A stretch of DNA of 64,000 nt, from assembly GCA_964035545.1 (NCBI GenBank), contig OZ037767.1, forward strand, positions 22,088,628 through 22,152,627. The letters run 5' to 3'. Below the pieces are notes generated by a model, which was not told the DNA's origin, ran no database searches, and was given only the letters and a program-made list of their open reading frames with translations. The DNA is from Bugula neritina. Lineage: Eukaryota; Animalia; Bryozoa. The position numbers and the translations under genes were made by a program. Shown here in pieces: positions 142 to 25,554 of this stretch; the stretch's first letter is position 1, and every line of letters starts with the position of its first letter.

Positions 142-2374
142 GTCGACGACTTCTTGAAGCAGAGCAATCAAGGAATGCCTTTGTCTGCAGTTTATGTGGC
201 AGGCAATGCCCTGGCAGCAGTAGCAGCAGCTTTCCTCCTGCCAGGTCTGCTATGCAAGCCAATCAGCAAGTGTATGCCAGGAGACAGAAGCAGCACAGTG
301 GTAAGGCAACTTCAGTCCCAAAATTATCGAATATTAGAAAAGTGATGAATTACTGCTTCGAAAAATATTTGTCCTTGTCTTAAACTGCAGATTTGGGTTT
401 AATGAGGTTCCTAGAATATTAAATTATTTCCAATTCAATACAATCAAGTATCACATTAACCTGGGGGTCATCTCAGTCATTAGTAGTTGCATTATCTATT
501 ATAAAAAACATAATGCAAATTCTCATCTTATTACTGTGTTATTATTCAGCAACTTTTGTTAGAAAGTAGCTTTTCCCTAGACATCACGTCATTACACATC
601 TAAATAATATTATGAGCATTCTAAGTGAAACTGACTTTCAATTATACAAAGCAAGTAAATTGTCCAATACAAAATAGAATGAATAGCAAGGGATTATTTA
701 GTAGTAAAGTTAACAATAAATACATCATCATGAAACTTAACAAATGTTTTAGCAATTGCCATGATCTTAATGATTTCACATTGAACAATATGATTCAGCC
801 CTTATTAAATAGAACTGTTATTCCAATTTCTCATACATTTAGGACAATATTCTGTATAAAAATTGTATGGTAATATAAAAGAAATACTTTTTCCTTGACT
901 TAACATACTTTTATAAAATTTAGAAATTTAGTTTTAAAAATGACACACACAATACATTGCATGCACATTTTTACAAACACAAAGCTTTTTTATATTTGTA
1001 AAATTATTTTAAACTGTTATGGCAGCTACAACAAAAAAACACTACCGAGGTATTACTATTTTGGTAAAATAATTGTTCTCAATGGGGTTTGAACCCGATA
1101 CCTCCAGATTGCAAGTAGTTGAGCTAATCATTGCATCACTGGCACTACTGGGTAGACGCCATTCTACATCCCACCCAGTTCTCAAAAACTTCACTGGCCT
1201 CTCTACTACTCCATCAGTTTTCAGGCTCCCCTGGCCACTCAGCTTCCTTGGAGTACTACTGTACTTCACTAAAGGTCGAAATAGCCCCCAATGAGATTCG
1301 CACCCAAGACCTCTGGCTTGCAAGCAAGCATGCTAACCATTACACCACAAGGAATTATGAGTAAATGCAACTACAATTTCGTTAACAAAGCTACATGAAT
1401 TTTTATGTCACATCTCATTGTTACTCTAATGTATTGCAACAAAAAAGTAAAAATGCTTACATTCGTATATGTTCAAAAGGCTGTTATCAATCAGAATGTT
1501 CATAATATTATTTAGATGTGTAATGGCGTGATGCCTAGGAAAAAGCTACTTTCTAATAAAAGTTGCTGAATAATAACACAGTGATAAGATGAGAATTTGC
1601 ATTATGTTTTTTAAAGTAATATTGAATTGATCAAATTTACATTTAAACCATATACTGAACATTTATATTGTTTATAGAGCAGTTTGAAGAAGAACTTTAG
1701 GTTATCTTGTTTATTCACAGATGATCGGGGTGATGACTCAGTCGAGCAATTGACTCGTGATTATGAAAGAGATGCTAGAGAGCTCTTTAGTAAGCACAGC
1801 AGAAGAGTAGAAAAAATTCAAGTAGGTTGCACAAACATACTCAATGTTGTACAAATAAGTAGGCTGTGCAGTGTACTCTGTTCATTTACTCCTGGTGTGA
1901 GACATCTAAAACTACAAGATTACTGAGAATAAGTTTTGAGAGTTTGTAAAAGCTACTAGGGCTTTTCTTAAATCTTTGATTTTGAGGTGATGAAAATGCA
2001 TCTTACAGTTTATTTTTCAAAGGCAACTATAATATATTTTTAAACTAAAGGAGCGGTTTTAGAAACTTATGCTTTCATTTAAGCAGACATAAAATAATTT
2101 GAAGTCTACCAGTCATAAAGTCCAAATAGTAATTTTAAGCATTTAGAAACAAAATAAACTTTATACATTAAATTTATTCACAAGAAGTAAGATTATTTTG
2201 CAGGATGAAAGTGAACGCCAAAGGGCTCAAGAGCATATGGATGTGGTTTGGCAGGGAATTGAGTTTGCGTTTAAGAAACTGTGGGAATGGGTGAAAGTGA
2301 AAGCAACTGAGTGGATTCTTGGACGAATTGGTTCTATTGCCAGTTGGATTGGGAAACTGTTCCTTACTGAATAA
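142..2374 (+). CDS. RING + Trp-rich amphipathic-helix protein, paralog 1 (5'-partial; exon 1 lies upstream of the window)
   Basis: Exons 142-300 (xRRLLEAEQSRNAFVCSLCGRQCPGSSSSSFPPARSAMQANQQVYARRQKQHS), 1721-1821 (DDRGDDSVEQLTRDYERDARELFSKHSRRVEKIQ) and 2204-2374 (DESERQRAQEHMDVVWQGIEFAFKKLWEWVKVKATEWILGRIGSIASWIGKLFLTE*). All have GT-AG boundaries with compatible phases (1,1,0). Exon lengths 159/101/171 match paralog 2. Confidence 0.85.
1076..1143 (-). mobile_element. tRNA-derived SINE head or degenerate tRNA-like fragment (intronic)
   Basis: Reverse complement gccagtgatgcaatgattagctcaactacTTGCAatctggaggtatcGGGTTCAAACCCcattg has A-box-like and B-box-like motifs but imperfect stems. Related to 1284-1352. 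Confidence 0.55.
1284..1352 (-). mobile_element. tRNA(Ala,TGC)-like SINE head or tRNA pseudogene (intronic)
   Basis: Reverse complement TGGTGTAATGGTTAGCatgcttgcTTGCAAgccagaggtcttgGGTGCGAATCTC has an A box, a CTTGCAA anticodon-loop-like segment and a B-box-like motif. A related copy lies at ~41706-41775, so it is a dispersed repeat. Confidence 0.65.
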
Positions 2375-3568
2375 ATATTTTTCCTCCGAAGTAGTTTGAC
2401 ATTCAAGTGTAATAGTGGCAAAATTCTTTTAGTCCAAGTTTTTTAATGTTCTTAGTAAGTTTTTGTTTTTTATGCGAGAACCTAACGCTTTTTACTAATT
2501 TTTTAATCATGAACACAAGTTGTTTTCAATCTGTCCATTACTTCACTTAGATTATTTACTCCTAAACAACTCTTTTTGTTACTGCTATTTTACTACTCAT
2601 CCATGCATAACGGAGAACTACATATATCTTCTGAGAGTTGCCTCTGTTCTGTTTCTCAGCTTGACACTAGCTCTTTGTAATTTTACTTTTCAAAAATATT
2701 CCAACAGAAATGCTAATATACTTGAAGCCTCGTTGCATAATTTTCTTCTAAATTTTTGTGATTTATACAAGTTTCTTTTCAATTTAAAATTATGCAAACA
2801 AAACTAGATCAACTTTTTGCACCTAATCAATTTTAATAAATCAGGCGCTAAATCCAAAGATTCAAATAATCTATTATTTAGTTTAGATTGACTTTTTGTT
2901 CTATTGTGAGTAATAATTAAGGAACCAGCCAATAATAAACTTATAGATTAACTGCAATAGCTCCATGCAGAGACAAACGAATATATTTCTAATATTACTA
3001 ATTATCAGACTCACAATACTTGGAAGGTAAAAGGCCAAGTGCTTAAAACGAAATCTCAAAATTACTAATTAAAAATAAACGACACTCAGTGCCGCAGGTT
3101 GACTTAGAGAATGTGGAACTATGCTGAAATATAAAATATATAATACAGCATACAACGTAGCATATAATACAGCATATTGTATAACACCGCTAATAACATA
3201 AAAAGCTTCAAATAGCATGAAATGGAAAAATTTATGTAATAAATAACAGACACCCACACACATACCATATAAATATTAATTTTAGCATAAATATGATTTA
3301 ACATAGCATATAGCCTAAATAAAAGAGCAATAACATGTGTGCGTGCATGTGTGTGAGTGTACTAAAAGGAAACTTACAAGATGTCATCATTGGAAACTGT
3401 GAAGTTGGAAAATCCAGACAGTTAGAAAATTCAAACTAGGTAACAGCAATCACTTTGCTCATCAAGTTCAACTACACATTGCATCATGGACTGCTCCTTA
3501 GATGTTGTTAATGTCTAAGCTGAGTTACTTATAATTTGACAAAGTAAATCACTATCTCTTTAACTACC

Positions 3569-6083
3569 ATGGCATACAAAGAAGCCAATAATCTATCCTT
3601 TGCCAAAGTCATATTTGACGAAGAAGATATCCATGTTTGTGAAGTCTGTTATGAAGAGGAGAACCTGAAGAAGCTGCCATGTGGTCACCTTGAGTGCAAG
3701 ACATGCATTGGTAAGTAGCAACCTATGCTTTATATATTTTTCATTTGATATAGTAAAAGTCGGTAAAATACTGTTAGTTGAAGGGTTGAAACTTATGCTT
3801 AAAATTCTAAACAGAGTCATCCATACTAATCTGTAATTACAAAAATTCTAAAATAAACACGGTTGTCAATTAGGTTATCATAATTTAATAGCAGTAAGGC
3901 TCATCTATCTTCTAAAAAATCTTTTGAAGCAGTCAGCTATATTCTATATAAACTTAATTCTGATAGACACCATATCATATTGATGATTAGTTTTTTCTCA
4001 AATACTTAGTTGTATTTGTTTAATTTTGGACTAACATTTAGGTAGTTTGTGATAAAAACATTTACATACTCAAACCTCAAACCAGCAACATGCAGCAATT
4101 ATTTTGAGTAAATTGTTAATACTTGATTGTAACTTTATAATAGATAGACGCATTGCGACAGCAAAGAGGCAGCACAAGCCATTTAAATGCACAACCTGCC
4201 TAACAACGATATCTGGAGAGTCCAGCAACAGCTTTCCCACAGCTTACCATGCTCTGGATGAGAACAGGTCTTTATATAAGAAAAGAGCTGAATATGCTAG
4301 CAGTAAGTCATAAACCTCTCTCACTATACATGAATGTTGCTACATTTTCTGATACAGTGCTCCTGTATAGCTAATAAATCTCTTTCTCACGAGATTCTCA
4401 CGAGAAGGGCTTGGCTCCCCATTTTTGACTAAGATACCATTGAAAATCTATGATATAAAATTTTTCAAATCAATTTCCAATTTTGAGTAAGTAATGCTGC
4501 CATTTTTGTGGAAGCTTTCTCCTGTATAAACGATAAGGAAGAAGATGGAATGTGTTGCTGAGGTACTTTCATGTGCAGATTAAAGGTCAAATGCAATAAT
4601 GTGTATAAATTGACAAGTTTATATTACATGGCCAGATGTCATTTAATGAGGTATATGTTTATAAACACAGCCCTAGAAACAAAAAGGCTGAATTTAGTAG
4701 GTCATTGAGGTAAATTTGTCCTTCTGCTATGTCACAGATTAAGGTTTCAGGACCTGTTAGCTCAGTGAGATATGGAAGGAGCATTGTATAAAATAACACA
4801 GTAGATATCTGGATGCCAATACTATACCGTCTAGTTATATAACAGCTTATAACCAGTAAGAATAGTTGTCTCTATAACATCAATGCTTCTGATTAAAAAG
4901 AGGTTTTAATATGATGAAGAAACTTGACAGCTATTTAGTAAAACTAATTTATTTATGGTGGCTTGACTTTATGCTTCCATCTTGAATTTTAAAGATATCA
5001 ATATTCAGAAGATTAAGCATTGCATGCATACCAATCAGATGATTACTGAGAAACACTATAGATTTATATTATAAATTGTTTATAGGGATAGATATATTTG
5101 TTTATTATAGGGGTGAATAATTTGTTTATAGGGGTGGATATATTTGTTTATAGGTCGGAATATATTTGTTTATAGGGGTGGATAAATTTGTTTATAGGTG
5201 AGAATATATTTGTTTATAGGGGTGGATAAATTTGTTTATAGGGGTGGATAAATTTGTTTATAGGAGTGGATAAATTTGTTTATAGGTGGGAATATAGATG
5301 AAGAAGAAAGAGAGTCTTATGAAGTAATTGTAATGGACTTTGAAGAAGATGTTCAAAGTTTGCATGATAAGTACAAAATGAGAATGGAAAAGATTCAAGT
5401 AAGAAACATAATTTATTTTTAAATGTATTATGCGATAACAAACAGGTTTATGCAAATCCAAGCATATTGCTATTCAAAGCAATGCAAGCTCTGTAGCCCT
5501 AAAACAAGTTCTCTTGTACCAAGTACAACTTTTGCAGTCAGAAGTACATCATAAATTTAGTAAGCACACAAACCTGCAGGCATCAGTATATAATATTTTT
5601 TTAAACAGTATGCAATTGTACTATTTCCTGAGGAAATATTATTATTAATAAATACAGTATATAATTTGTCATTACACAAGTATTTAAAAGCTGCCGGTCT
5701 ATATCTATTAAAGTGCTGATCTAGGTCATGAGTGTGAGCCCATCAGGGCCATCAGTAATGTCAGAAAAAGCATCCAATCACGATTACTCTTATATCACAG
5801 TAAACTAGTCTTCACCCTATCCGAAAAACTTGCCATCAGAAATTTTCGCAGAGATTATATGGACATGAAAGCAATCATGTTAGTACAATATGCAATTATA
5901 TACTTGTCTCAGAGTGCAGAAGGAAGAAGGAGAGCTCAAGGGTTCATTAGATCAATGATGTCTAAACTGAACTATGCCCTAATGAAGCTGAGAGACTGGG
6001 TAACCAATGCCGTTAAATGGACCTTCAACTGGATAAGTGGGAGAATCAGCAGCTTCATGAGCTGGATGAGCAGTTTTATCTGA
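3569..6083 (+). CDS. RING (C3HC4) + Trp-rich amphipathic-helix protein, paralog 2 (~190-194 aa)
   Basis: accATGg at 3569. Exons: 3569-3710 (MAYKEANNLSFAKVIFDEEDIHVCEVCYEEENLKKLPCGHLECKTCI); 4144-4302 (DRRIATAKRQHKPFKCTTCLTTISGESSNSFPTAYHALDENRSLYKKRAEYAS); 5298 (or in-frame 5286)-5398 (EEERESYEVIVMDFEEDVQSLHDKYKMRMEKIQ); 5913-6083 (SAEGRRRAQGFIRSMMSKLNYALMKLRDWVTNAVKWTFNWISGRISSFMSWMSSFI*). RING spacing is C-x2-C-x10-C-x-H-x2-C-x2-C-x16-C-x2-C. AATAAA near 6336. Confidence 0.9.
5071..5297. repeat. ~22-bp minisatellite (~10 copies) built from the exon-3 splice acceptor of paralog 2
   Basis: Unit about TTTGTTTATAGGGGTGGATAAA. TATAG ends at 5085, 5110, 5131, 5153, 5175, 5197, 5219, 5241, 5263 and 5285. 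Confidence 0.9.
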
Positions 6084-6836
6084 AGTTGAAGTAAATTTAG
6101 TTACATACACATGCTATGTTGTGAGACATTAAATTCCGTGACATAATGGTACCAAGTGCTGCAAAAGTGGTAACATGCTAGAGCATGTGTCACTTCAAAA
6201 ACTTTGTGACTCAAATTATTGCTGCTATAAAATTTATCAATTTCATTTTTATACAATTTCAAGTACACGGAAGCATTGGTTCATCAGTGTGTCATTAAAA
6301 TGCTATTAAATATTGTTACATTTAATGCTTTTCTAAATAAAACTCATATTTTGTAACACCATATAGTAGAGAACTGTATTTGGTTAGTTGTGCCATACTG
6401 TCAACACCAGTTTTATTGTTATATAAATGTCAATAAAAACATGTACTTTCTCGGATCAATTATGACTGTTGATAATTATAGATTCTCTGTTATATGGCGT
6501 AGTTTACTTGGTTGGTTTAAACCAAGATAATTTTGTAATAGTCTTATTCCTGGTTGCTTACAATTCGCTATTGCTAAGTATACCTTTATCCTGACCAGTA
6601 TATGACCATAGACATGATGAAGTAGATGCCCAGCTGTGTCCTACAATGATCTGAATAGAATTTGGGACTAGTTGTTAGTTTATTCAGTATTTATGTGAGG
6701 CTAACTTACTGATAGTAATACTTTAGGCAATGTGTATTTCCTAATATATGTAGCACCTTTTTAATATTCCTTATTCAATTGAATCAGCAGAAAATTGTAT
6801 TATATTACATTAAAAACGTAGCTTCATGTTTCTGCG

Positions 6837-6923
6837 AGTGTTCGAGTGTGTTGTGTGTGTGTTGTGTGTGTGTGTGTGTTTGTGTCTGTGAGTGTATGAG
6901 TGTATGTGTGTGTGTATGTGAGT

Positions 6924-6958
<35 letters not shown>

Positions 6959-7113
6959 CTGCGTGTGTTGTCTGTGTGTCTTGTCTGTGTGAGTGTGCGA
7001 GTGTGCGAGTGTGTGTGTGTGCTGTGTGTGTGCGTGTGTGTGTGTGTGGTGTGTGTGTGTGTGCGAGTGTGTGCGAGTGTGCGAGTGTGCGGGTGTGTGC
7101 GAGTGTGTGCGTG

Positions 7114-7152
<39 letters not shown>

Positions 7153-7166
7153 TGTGTGTGTGTGTA
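6837..7166. repeat. Imperfect (GT)n microsatellite
   Basis: About 330 bp of GT/GCGT/GAGT repeats. It explains the poly-CV and poly-HT ORFs. Confidence 0.95.
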
Positions 7167-7181
7167 TAGCTATGTGTGTTG

Positions 7182-7231
7182 TCTGGTTGGTTATTTTCAG
7201 CAAGTGCACTTGCTAAAAATAACCAACCAGA
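7182..7231. repeat. 50-bp near-perfect spacerless palindrome
   Basis: tctggttggttattttcagcaagtg|cacttgctaaaaataaccaaccaga: 25-bp arms with one mismatch. Confidence 0.85.
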
Positions 7232-7912
7232 GCTTTATAAAAGAATATCTGCAATAACACCGAAACAAGAACAACCACTTTTGATTATTCTTCTGCAGTC
7301 AAAAACAATAGTATCTTTATTTTTAGCTCTAGGGGAAAACTATGGCGTGCTCTTGCAACAATGTTTATTTCCACTTGGTCTATATGTTTAACTTTGTTTG
7401 GCACTTAGAATTTAGAAAAGAAACTACTTTTAAATTGACTGAGAATAATGCATCACACTCCAACCATAAACTAGATTTTGAGCTATTAGCAAAAAAGTCT
7501 CCATCCATGTGCTTATTTGTACTGCTTGATTAGCTAATAGAACAGGCAGTTTATCTGAGGGAATGACACACTGGATTTACAAAGGTATTATAGCGGTTTC
7601 ACTATTTCAAGGTCAAGCAAGCACATACTATATTATCATGTAACAAGAGCAAGTTAATATCATAGCAACTTCAGTTTCATTTGATCAGGTCAGGCAGTTT
7701 CACTATGTTTGGCAGTTTCATTGGTTCAGAGATTTTATACTCTATTAGTGTCACAGTAGCTATTATCTTTAGTTACGTTTGATAAGAGCTAGCAGTTTCA
7801 TTATAGTAGAGATTTATACTTGCAGGAAAGTGAGCAGTTTCTTTTTGATTAAACCTTTAAGCTTTCAGTTTAGCTAAGTCAAATAGGCTGAAGAGAAGAT
7901 TCTACCTTCAAA

Positions 7913-9692
7913 ATGGCAGAAAGAGCAACAGTTCAACGACTTTGCAGGTTATCGACAGTAATACTTGAAAAAGAAAAAGTGTACACTTGTTGCCAGTGTT
8001 ATGAAGACAACGATAGTCTAAGACTGCTGTCATGTGGTCACATATTGTGTCAATCTTGTATTAGTAAGTTCTAAACTACTGTAATAGATTACAGCTACAG
8101 CTCTATCTAACTTTTATAGGGCATTTAAATTGCTTCACAGTCTGAAGGGATGCTTTTTGCGATAGATTTGTGCTTGCTGTTTTCATAAACTTATGGTTAT
8201 GGTTTCCAAACACTGAATGAAAAATTCATTCCTATATCTAATGCAAAGTTTAGAAACGCAGCAGCACATGAGATTTTAGCTAAAATCAATCTATTAATAA
8301 AATTAAGCAAAAGCCTAAGTTTTTAGGGATACAAAATGCTGGCTAAGATTGATACCAATTGTTAAATTGTTAGGGTGTGAAATTTAGAAAGTAGTTGTAG
8401 CATAAGATTTCCTTCATCAACAATTTAAAATGATTGGTATTGTTTTACCTCTCATATTGAAGGTGTTTTTCTTGGCTTGGAGTGAGTCCACCAAAGTATA
8501 TGTAGATATTAAAAACCTCAATAAAAGTTTGAACAGGGTGATGTCCTATAGTGATCAATCATTCGTTTTATTTCAGACAAGTTTTAACATTTACCAATTA
8601 ATGTAATTGATTTGTAAGTGAATGCAATTTTAGAGGAGGGATATATTCGAGCATGCACGAGGTCTATCAACCTTCTGTGTCCTGAATGCCAAGATGTAAT
8701 ATACGAAGCACCAGAGGATGGGGATGTTGATTACTCAAATAATCCTCTTCTTGATTCGCTTCCACCTGCTGAAAAATTCATTGAATCAAACCAAAAGGTT
8801 CATAAAAAGAGGGGTGGATTTCTTAGTGGTAAGAAATCAGCCTTATTATATGAATATTATTTTTGGACTAGTTTGTTGCTGAAGACAAATAGCCAGTAAT
8901 TATTGGGTGGTTGAATTAACATTTAGTCTTTATAATCTATAATTAGTTGAGTACAGTAAGCAATAGAAGCAAATAATGTTATTCTTTGCTCTGTTACATT
9001 CTATCCTAGCCATCTGTTTAGTTTTATTTTGAAATATAATTTTTGGAAAAAAATTTCAAATTTAGGCTTTTTTATAAATTTATCTTCTTAAATTTTTACT
9101 TTTAGCTTGTCATAAAACGAATCACTTACTATGTAGGTACCCGTATTTATTTACTGGGAATTGGGATATTGTATTAAATATCTAATATACGCATGTGTGT
9201 ATAATTGGTAAAGGTTGGAGACAACCAAGTAAAGGAGACACGTATAAAAGTGTGGCCATGGATTTTCAAAAGGATGTAACTGAATTGTTCAGCAAACACG
9301 AGAAACGTTTAGAAAAAACACTGGTAAGACCATTTTTGCAGTGCAGAATAGTTTAACCACTAAGTTCCTTTCAAATTCTATTGTTACGTGATATTGCAAC
9401 TTTTAGTAGTGTAACTCTATTCATGTTTTTTAACTTCATCTGATTTTATCATACCTTTTCAAAGAGATTTGCTATTTAAATACTACATTCTGATTGTTAA
9501 AATAGTTGAAGCCGTTGTGTGTTTTAGGATCCTGATGTACGAGTAGCCTCAAAGAAGCGCCTGGATCTTCTCAAGAGAGAAATACAGTTTGGTTTCGTCA
9601 AAATATTTCAATGGATAGACGGAAACCACCCATGGATAGGAGATCGAATGGAGACGTTCAATGAGTGGATTAGCAGGCTTTTTCAGCAGTAA
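7913..9692 (+). CDS. RING (C3HC4) + Trp-rich amphipathic-helix protein, paralog 3 (~206 aa)
   Basis: aaaATGg at 7913. Exons: 7913-8063 (MAERATVQRLCRLSTVILEKEKVYTCCQCYEDNDSLRLLSCGHILCQSCI); 8634-8828 (KEGYIRACTRSINLLCPECQDVIYEAPEDGDVDYSNNPLLDSLPPAEKFIESNQKVHKKRGGFLS); 9214-9323 (GWRQPSKGDTYKSVAMDFQKDVTELFSKHEKRLEKTL; acceptor could be the in-frame 9235); 9528-9692 (DPDVRVASKKRLDLLKREIQFGFVKIFQWIDGNHPWIGDRMETFNEWISRLFQQ*). Same intron phases (1,1,0) as paralogs 1 and 2. AATAAA near 9853. Confidence 0.88.

Positions 9693-10821: not shown

Positions 10822-25554
<14,733 letters not shown>

What the first reader, a model, noticed from the sequence alone, without database searches (positions are those of the whole stretch)
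142..9692. Tandem array of three divergent mini-RING genes with an unrecognised RING + charged helix + Trp-rich amphipathic tail architecture
Seen: three head-to-tail + strand genes about 4 kb apart, invisible as such in the ORF track because each is split over small exons. They share intron positions and phases (intron 1 splits the RING right after CxxCI), and paralogs 1 and 2 have identical exon 2-4 lengths (159/101/171). They share D[YF]xxDxxxL[FH]xK[HY]xxRxEK in exon 3 and K[LI]xxW...WIxxR[IM]xxxxxW[IM]xx[LF][FI] in exon 4, yet the proteins are highly diverged and no introns align by eye. Known: the L[PS]CGHxxCxxCI ... CxxC ... S[FL]P layout is typical of TRIM-family N-terminal C3HC4 RINGs, but there is no B-box, and no PRY/SPRY or NHL domain. 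Inference: a lineage-specific, rapidly diversifying family of membrane-targeted ubiquitin ligases or ligase-like effectors. Tandem expansion with intact frames and high divergence is a pattern often seen in innate-immunity genes. Paralog 1 lacks exon 1 here, so the array may continue to the left.
Basis: partly seen in the sequence, partly recalled or inferred. Interest (0 to 1): 0.88.

Follow-up and report, generated by a model that had tools for sequence, protein, structure and literature searches.

The report
Bryozoan RING genes with Trp-rich tails
A bryozoan (Bugula) chromosome carries four, not three, old tandem copies of a small gene that joins a RING zinc finger of the ubiquitin-ligase type to a tryptophan-rich two-helix tail; this arrangement was not found in annotated proteins of other animals, and neither expression nor activity has been shown.

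Summary
The array has four head-to-tail genes, not three. A fourth copy and the missing exon 1 of paralog 1 lie in the 10 kb left of the window. All four have four exons, GT-AG introns in phases 1,1,0, eight conserved RING zinc ligands and open frames of about 189-199 codons.

The copies are ancient. Synonymous sites are saturated and introns do not align, so recent rapid expansion is not shown.

The family is larger than the array. A cluster about 9 Mb away on the same chromosome was already reported by this scan (s1-472049) and has the same gene structure. One more gene lies on another contig. Relatives occur in Bugula neritina-associated metagenomes.

One ortholog pair from the sister cluster gives dN/dS about 0.3 with indel-free exons, which indicates real, constrained genes.

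The tail folds as a helix-turn-helix (pLDDT 84). It has no transmembrane-grade segment in the four copies, and its amphipathicity is only modest. One relative ends in a true hydrophobic anchor.

No B-box is present, so these are not TRIM proteins. No RNA data were available.

The nearest matches outside bryozoans are Trp-rich motifs in phage proteins. This is more likely convergence than shared ancestry.

Best reading: a Bugula-restricted family of RING ligases with a new targeting or oligomerising tail. Interest is moderate.

The parts
142..300 (+). P1 exon 2 (159 nt, phase 1 to 1). Encodes the last CxxC pair of the RING and the SFP...N motif. P1 exon 1 lies outside the window at L010:9618-9756, across a 385-nt intron.
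   Evidence: Splice borders; alignment A5.
1721..1821 (+). P1 exon 3 (101 nt). Charged helix with the motif DYERDARELFSKHSRRVEK.
2204..2374 (+). P1 exon 4 (171 nt including the stop). Trp-rich tail, predicted as helix 2-31 and helix 35-54.
3569..3710 (+). P2 exon 1 (142 nt). Start codon, pre-RING leader and RING ligands C-C-C-H-C-C.
4144..4302 (+). P2 exon 2 (159 nt). RING ligands 7-8 and the SFP motif.
5298..5398 (+). P2 exon 3 (101 nt). An alternative in-frame acceptor at 5286 would give 113 nt.
5913..6083 (+). P2 exon 4 (171 nt including the stop). Trp-rich tail.
7913..8063 (+). P3 exon 1 (151 nt). Start codon and the N-terminal part of the RING.
8634..8828 (+). P3 exon 2 (195 nt). RING ligands 7-8 with a 12-residue insertion before the SLP motif.
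9235..9323 (+). P3 exon 3 (89 nt). An alternative in-frame acceptor at 9214 would give 110 nt.
9528..9692 (+). P3 exon 4 (165 nt including the stop). Trp-rich tail.

Best explanation
The locus is a four-gene tandem array of old paralogs. It belongs to a family, apparently restricted to Bugula bryozoans, of small cytosolic proteins of about 190-200 residues. The family has at least 13 genes in three loci of this genome.

Each protein has four parts:
- a short conserved leader;
- a C3HC4 RING split by a phase-1 intron;
- a highly charged helix (exon 3);
- a Trp-rich two-helix hairpin (exon 4).

Shown here: the gene structure, conservation of the eight zinc ligands, maintenance of the frame over saturating divergence, and the predicted helical hairpin.

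Inferred: the RING recruits an E2 and acts as a ubiquitin ligase. The tail is the specificity module. It most likely holds the ligase on a lipid or membrane surface, or assembles it into oligomers there, so that nearby proteins are ubiquitinated.
For: - Gene structure: all 16 exons are open and all splice sites canonical, with the same phases in four copies whose DNA no longer aligns. The chance of a 190-codon open frame in this sequence is about 7e-7 per gene.
- RING: all eight zinc ligands are invariant, and exon 1 matches RING models.
- Constraint: pN is below pS among paralogs. In the sister-cluster ortholog pair, exons have no indels against 51 gap columns in introns, and dN/dS is 0.30.
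- Tail fold: helix-turn-helix at pLDDT 84. Trp content is 5.6-8.9%.
- Tail periodicity: the hydrophobic moment peaks in the helical band (95-100 degrees) in all four copies. It is significant for P2 and for the sister-cluster and C6 members.
- Membrane hint: the relative P0026/L034 has an array-type exon 3, and its tail runs into a transmembrane-grade segment (Kyte-Doolittle 2.12).
- Cytosolic location: the N-termini show no signal peptide (read directly from the sequences).
Against: - No transcript evidence exists; no RNA run holds the locus.
- The residue after the last RING cysteine, the usual Arg/Lys 'linchpin', is G, L, Q or M in the four copies. Ligase activity may therefore be weak or absent.
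- Amphipathicity of the four tails is only marginally above shuffled sequence.
- No tail has a membrane-spanning segment.
- A two-helix hairpin could equally serve self-association.
- Full-length proteins were never searched or folded, because exons could only be handled one at a time.
Confidence: 0.5

Rival explanations
1. The tail and the charged helix form an oligomerisation module, a short helical bundle doing the job of the TRIM coiled coil. It would bring RINGs together for activity, without any membrane contact.
For: - The tail is predicted as a packed two-helix hairpin with pTM 0.54.
- Hydrophobic moments are weak compared with shuffles.
- The conserved pre-RING leader and post-RING segment resemble the flanking helices that dimerise TRIM RINGs (my own knowledge; alignments).
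- The closest other RING exons in the genome belong to TRIM-NHL-type genes.
Against: - One relative carries a true hydrophobic anchor after the tail.
- High Trp content is typical of interfacial membrane helices rather than coiled coils.
- Foldseek found no coiled-coil or bundle match.
Confidence: 0.3
2. The proteins are ligase-dead or weak RING adaptors or decoys. They would bind E2s or substrates without catalysing transfer.
For: The linchpin position is G, L, Q or M, and the E2-contact position C1+2 is Q in P3.
Against: All zinc ligands are kept, and V sits at C1+2 in three of four copies. Many active RINGs lack an Arg linchpin (my own knowledge). Sister-cluster members have R or K at this position.
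Confidence: 0.12
3. The tail is a membrane-disrupting, antimicrobial-peptide-like or pore-forming element, possibly sharing ancestry with Trp-rich modules of phage injected proteins.
For: - Phage-like proteins P0046, P0037 and P0050 share the motif KIW..IK..FKWI..KI..F..WI.GLF with the tails, at single-stretch scores of 32-36 bits.
- Their reversed sequences score 11 bits or less.
- P0046 is a phiKZ internal-head-protein family member.
- One sister-cluster tail hits that Pfam model at E = 3e-4.
- hhalign gives probability 98%.
Against: - The hhalign set was chosen from hits to the same profile, so that test is circular.
- None of the four array tails hits the Pfam model.
- The tape-measure hits are periodicity artefacts, since reversed sequences score as high.
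- There is no signal peptide, so the protein is not secreted.
- Three of the four tails carry a net charge near zero or negative (-3, -1, +1); only P2 is cationic at +7.
Confidence: 0.06
4. The copies are untranscribed relics or pseudogenes.
For: There is no RNA evidence, and no full-length spliced product appears in the protein libraries.
Against: Four copies keep frames, splice sites, phases and zinc ligands although synonymous sites are saturated.
Confidence: 0.02

Closest known systems
TRIM/RBCC ubiquitin ligases (including the TRIM-NHL-type genes of this genome at C2:28.57 Mb and C1:28.31 Mb)
   Same: An N-terminal C3HC4 RING follows a short conserved leader, and helical segments lie downstream. 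These genes carry the nearest RING exons outside the family in the genome.
   Different: There is no B-box, no long coiled coil, and no SPRY, NHL or other C-terminal domain. The RING is split by an intron after CxxC[IL], which the TRIM-NHL genes examined lack. The total length is about 190 residues.
Sister cluster in the same genome (C3:31.136-31.186 Mb; earlier scan finding s1-472049)
   Same: The four-exon structure, phases 1,1,0, leader, RING, SFP/FP motif, exon-3 helix and tail starting [DN]PxER are all the same.
   Different: Tail identity is only 15-29%. Several members there have extended tails (an extra helix or Thr/Pro-rich repeats). The exon-3 motif D[YF]xxDxxxLxxK[HY] is sharper in this array.
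Small membrane-anchored RING ligases (RNF5/RNF185, RNF152/RNF183 group)
   Same: Similar size, an N-terminal C3HC4 RING facing the cytosol, and a C-terminal element that sets location (my own knowledge). The relative P0026 has a tail-anchor-like end.
   Different: The four array proteins have no transmembrane segment. No sequence similarity outside the RING was seen, and none of these proteins appeared among the hits of the tail-profile search.
Trp-rich helical motifs of phage proteins (Pfam PF12699 phiKZ_IP; tape-measure 'TMP' WxxΦ repeats)
   Same: A W-x2-[IV]-K ... W-[IV]-x2-LF pattern with about 11-residue spacing is shared. One family member hits PF12699 at E = 3e-4.
   Different: The phage proteins have no RING and a different context. 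Matches to tape-measure proteins survive sequence reversal, so they reflect periodic composition. The array's own tails do not reach any Pfam threshold.

Membership tests
RING finger (C3HC4) E3 ligases | Eight zinc ligands C-x2-C-x(9-39)-C-x-H-x2-C-x2-C-x(4-48)-C-x2-C | tested here: met
   All eight ligands are invariant in P0-P3: C-x2-C-x(10-11)-C-x-H-x2-C-x2-C in exon 1, with CxxC following about 18 residues later in exon 2.
RING finger (C3HC4) E3 ligases | Match to curated RING profiles above the gathering score | tested here: inconclusive
   Exon 1 alone gives E = 1e-5 to 1e-3 against zf-RING_5, zf-RING_UBOX and zf-C3HC4, below the cut-offs because only two thirds of the domain lies in that exon. 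The joined domain was not searched.
RING finger (C3HC4) E3 ligases | E2-activating 'linchpin' Arg/Lys after the last cysteine, and ligase activity | tested here: not met
   The residue after Cys8 is G (P1), L (P2), Q (P3) and M (P0). Activity itself cannot be tested with these tools.
TRIM / RBCC | B-box zinc finger after the RING | tested here: not met
   No B-box hit in any exon at E <= 10, and no further Cys/His cluster is present. The genome's real TRIM-NHL genes show B-boxes plainly.
TRIM / RBCC | Long antiparallel coiled coil plus a C-terminal substrate domain | tested here: not met
   Only about 90 helical residues follow the RING, and the stop codon ends exon 4.
Tail-anchored / transmembrane RING ligases | C-terminal hydrophobic segment able to span a membrane | tested here: not met
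   The Kyte-Doolittle 19-residue maximum is 0.49-1.07 in P0-P3, against 2.12 in the relative P0026.
phiKZ-like internal head proteins (PF12699) | Score above the Pfam gathering cut-off (27 bits) | tested here: not met
   No hit for the array's tails. One sister-cluster tail reaches E = 3e-4.
Bugula RING + Trp-rich-tail family (sister cluster, s1-472049) | Same exon-intron structure and detectable similarity in all four exons | tested here: met
   The exon-1, exon-2 and exon-4 profiles of the array hit sister-cluster genes genome-wide at E = 1.8e-11, 8.4e-5 and 0.0026. The exon-3 profile reaches only E = 1.39 genome-wide (0.0028 in the local search). Splice positions and phases are the same.

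The most novel reading that the evidence does not exclude
The Trp-rich hairpin is a true lipid- or membrane-engaging module. It would be related by descent, or by close functional convergence, to the Trp-rich segment of proteins that jumbo phages inject into bacteria. Bugula would have coupled it to a RING so that ubiquitin ligases sit on particular membranes, for example those around its bacterial symbionts or around invaders. That would be a new way of aiming ubiquitination at a lipid surface.
Probability: 0.07. Interest if true: 0.85.

Novelty: new variant of a known kind. Interest (0 to 1): 0.45.

Why it matters
RING ligases gain their specificity from whatever is attached to the RING. A compact family that swaps the usual TRIM modules for a short Trp-rich helical hairpin would add a new targeting principle. 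It would also give a handle on cell biology or immunity in bryozoans, a phylum that is almost unstudied at the molecular level and is known for its bacterial symbionts.

The value is tempered in three ways. The scan has already reported the sister cluster. Nothing here shows expression or activity. The 'fast-evolving immune gene' flavour is not borne out by the one dN/dS estimate available.

Tried and rejected
- **RNA evidence.** The look-up of sequencing runs returned one run, not on record as RNA and held only as assembled contigs, and no RNA holder.
- **Orthologs of the array.** With the exon-1 profile it returned only unrelated 61-64% GC contigs. The search for homologous proteins with P2 exon 4 found nothing. 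No dN/dS could therefore be computed for the array itself.
- **Paralog dN/dS.** Synonymous sites are saturated, so the ratio is meaningless.
- **Tape-measure proteins as relatives.** Rejected. The best single stretches score only 10-23 bits, and several reversed sequences score as high or higher.
- **Structure and feature searches of the tail.** Foldseek against the PDB gave nothing at E <= 0.001. The ESM Atlas feature search gave only scores below 0.9.
- **PDB sequence search with the half-RING.** Only generic RINGs were found.
- **Loci L030 and L031.** Each has a family-like exon 1 but no recognisable exons 2-4. L030 is interrupted by a reverse-transcriptase element. They were not pursued.
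- **Joined spliced proteins.** All searches were done exon by exon, by reference.
Full report
**Where the window lies.** The window is G000:C3:22,088,628-22,152,627 of a 216 Mb, roughly 33% GC animal genome. Contigs from two JGI metagenomes align to another part of this chromosome at 86-92% nucleotide identity over 7.5 kb, introns included. Their records are labelled AY690838, which is the Bugula neritina mitochondrial genome accession (PMC2678162). The genome is therefore a bryozoan of the Bugula neritina complex or very close to it. The earlier scan note s1-472049 says the same.

**Checking the observation.** All have AG/GT borders, and the intron phases are 1,1,0.
- P1: exons 2-4 at 142-300, 1721-1821 and 2204-2374.
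- P2: 3569-3710, 4144-4302, 5298-5398 and 5913-6083.
- P3: 7913-8063, 8634-8828, 9235-9323 and 9528-9692.

The quoted exon-3 and exon-4 motifs occur only at these places in the window and in 40 kb upstream.

**The array continues to the left.** I fetched the DNA left of the window. L010, the adjacent 10 kb, holds two things:
- P1's missing exon 1 at L010:9618-9756, which makes intron 1 385 nt long.
- A complete fourth gene, P0, at L010:4282-4432, 5083-5244, 5993-6090 and 7477-7644, with the same phases.

No further copy was seen in the next 30 kb. The predicted products are 189 (P1), 190 (P2), 199 (P3) and 192 (P0) residues, counted from exon lengths.

**Two uncertain acceptors.** P2's exon 3 may start at 5286, which has a better pyrimidine tract, rather than 5298. 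P3's exon 3 may start at 9214 rather than 9235. All four options are in frame.

**Is the similarity real?** P1's exon 4 was searched against all six frames of the genome. The exon-4 positions of P2, P0 and P3 came back as the top non-self hits, at E = 0.03-0.04 each and on the right strand. Profiles of exon 4 (A1) and exon 3 (A2) retrieve the four copies at E = 1e-13 to 1e-26. Otherwise they find only places in one region 9 Mb away. Amino-acid identity between copies is 41-54% in exon 1 and 23-41% in exons 2-4.

**Age of the duplication.** At the DNA level the genes do not align, except for 53 nt of the RING exon between P1 and P2. Synonymous differences are saturated (pS 0.70-0.88) while pN is 0.44-0.54. 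The duplication is therefore ancient. The frames have been kept against a chance expectation of about 7e-7 per gene. These are constrained coding genes, not a recent burst.

**The wider family.** The region C3:31.136-31.186 Mb was reported earlier by the scan as 'RING + amphipathic helix' genes (s1-472049). It holds genes with the same leader, the same RING split after CxxC[IL]G, the same FP...N segment, an exon-3 helix and a tail beginning [DN]PxER. The introns sit at the same positions and phases.

A further member lies on C6:7.696-7.698 Mb. An eight-sequence tail profile (A3) finds nine tails in the genome, all in the two C3 clusters. The next-nearest RING exons belong to genes with B-boxes, a coiled coil and NHL repeats. 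Any TRIM kinship is therefore at the level of the RING only.

**Relatives elsewhere.** The A3 profile was run against 1.84 billion representative proteins. Four exon-sized ORFs from the Bugula-associated metagenomes scored 39-69 bits in a single stretch: P0001, P0006, P0007 and P0026.
- P0001 is the ortholog of a sister-cluster gene.
- P0006 is only 50% identical to anything in G000, and P0026 only 25-29%. Gene content therefore differs between close Bugula lineages.
- P0026's contig carries an array-type exon 3 (…DTYDSFEEAKGAVTEFFSKHNRKIERMT). Its tail continues into a 19-residue segment of transmembrane-grade hydrophobicity.

No annotated animal protein with this tail appeared.

**One ortholog comparison.** For the one available ortholog pair (sister-cluster gene c2c against contig L036):
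- Exons are 93.7% identical with no gap columns. Introns are 91.9% identical with 51 gap columns.
- All splice sites are kept.
- dS = 0.150, dN = 0.044 and dN/dS = 0.30.

This is the best available evidence that family members are functional. It argues against pervasive positive selection. It does not come from this array.

**The RING.** All eight zinc ligands are invariant. Exon 1 alone matches several RING models at E = 1e-5 to 1e-3. In the PDB it matches generic RINGs such as CWC24, CBL, BRE1, RNF13 and TRIM5, all at E > 0.01. The hydrophobic E2-contact position two residues after the first cysteine is V in three copies and Q in P3. The residue after the last cysteine is G, L, Q or M rather than the Arg/Lys linchpin. 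Ligase activity is therefore likely but not assured.

**The tail.**
- Pfam finds nothing for exons 2-4.
- AlphaFold2 on the A3 alignment predicts helix 2-31, a three-residue break and helix 35-54 for P1's tail, with mean pLDDT 84 and pTM 0.54.
- Foldseek finds no specific relative.
- Trp makes up 5.6-8.9% of the tails.
- The maximum 19-residue Kyte-Doolittle hydropathy is 0.49-1.07, well below a membrane span.
- Hydrophobic moments peak in the helical band at 95-100 degrees. They exceed shuffles only weakly in the four array copies (fraction of shuffles reaching the observed value 0.02-0.11) and clearly in sister-cluster and C6 members (0.000-0.02).
- Exon 3 is 41-52% charged residues.

The data fit a surface-seeking or self-packing helical hairpin. 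They do not discriminate firmly between the two.

**The phage resemblance.** Most other hits of the tail profile were long phage tape-measure proteins (PhageMin_Tail). Their best single stretches score 10-23 bits, and several of their reversed sequences score as high or higher. Those matches are periodic-composition artefacts.

A smaller set behaves differently. P0046, P0037, P0050, P0048 and P0059 give single stretches of 32-37 bits, and their reversed sequences score 11 bits or less. They share a striking motif, …KIW..IK..FKWI..KI..F..WI.GLF.
- P0046 belongs to Pfam phiKZ_IP, the jumbo-phage internal head proteins (5.8e-10).
- P0037 sits in a phage-like gene row.
- One sister-cluster tail hits phiKZ_IP at E = 3e-4.
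- hhalign of the two motif alignments gives 98%. That set was picked from hits to the same profile, so the figure is inflated.
- A preprint reports that proteins carrying this Pfam domain are injected with phiKZ DNA, and that the injected cargo associates with host-derived lipids (10.1101/2024.03.24.586471).

I treat this as an unexplained resemblance, more likely convergence than descent.

**What could not be done.** No RNA run holds the locus, so splicing and expression are unverified. No full-length product was searched, aligned or folded, and all searches used single exons by reference. No orthologs of this array's own genes could be retrieved.

**Verdict.** The architecture is real and, as far as these libraries reach, confined to Bugula. 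It is best filed as a new variant of RING ligase with a novel helical tail. It belongs to the same family as the sister cluster the scan had already found. Rapid diversification, TRIM membership, membrane targeting and an immune role are not established.

Noticed in passing
window:497-1618: P1's intron 2 holds a 1.1 kb foldback element with 132-nt terminal inverted repeats (497-628 and 1487-1618, 92% complementary). It is probably a non-autonomous transposon. ARAGORN finds no tRNA in it.
   Followed up: partly
window:5071-5296: A 22-nt unit (ATAAATTTGTTTATAGGGGTGG) is repeated about 10 times and ends exactly at P2's exon-3 acceptor. Each unit carries an acceptor-like TTTATAG|G, which gives a row of decoy 3' splice sites. 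P0's intron 2 has a similar repeat array of short units at about L010:5400-5640.
   Followed up: no
window:7540-7880: GCAGTTTCA/T occurs four times within 220 nt upstream of P3's start codon, with looser copies nearby. The whole window has 6 matches against 1.5 expected. The excess partly reflects a ~98-nt duplication. The core AGTTTC resembles an IRF/ISRE half-site (my own knowledge). It is not shared by the window's P2 promoter (no match there); the P0 and P1 promoters in L010 were read by eye only, not pattern-searched.
   Followed up: partly
window:6846-7165: An imperfect (GT)n microsatellite of about 320 nt lies between P2 and P3. Similar arrays occur at about 53.1-53.7 kb.
   Followed up: no
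window:10813-25554: Downstream on the + strand there appears to be a multi-exon AAA-ATPase-type gene. Its last large ORF (25228-25554) matches the Vps4_C oligomerisation domain at E = 3e-4.
   Followed up: partly
L035 (Logan SRR17229696 contig), 27-539: A 170-residue ORF begins with what reads as a signal-peptide-like hydrophobic start (judged by eye, not tested). It carries two Trp-rich repeats like the tails (…VWVKIKNVFTKIWDAIKNFFTMVWGGIMKLF…) and has no RING. It comes from an unknown 37% GC organism. The best stretch scores 29 bits and the reversed sequence 17. It could be a secreted relative of the module or a chance look-alike.
   Followed up: partly
L030:4929-5240 (-) and L031:5603-5818 (-): Two further loci (C3:18.52 Mb and contig C298) have a family-like leader and RING exon but no recognisable exons 2-4. 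In L030 a reverse-transcriptase ORF follows directly. They may be broken copies or a different subfamily.
   Followed up: partly
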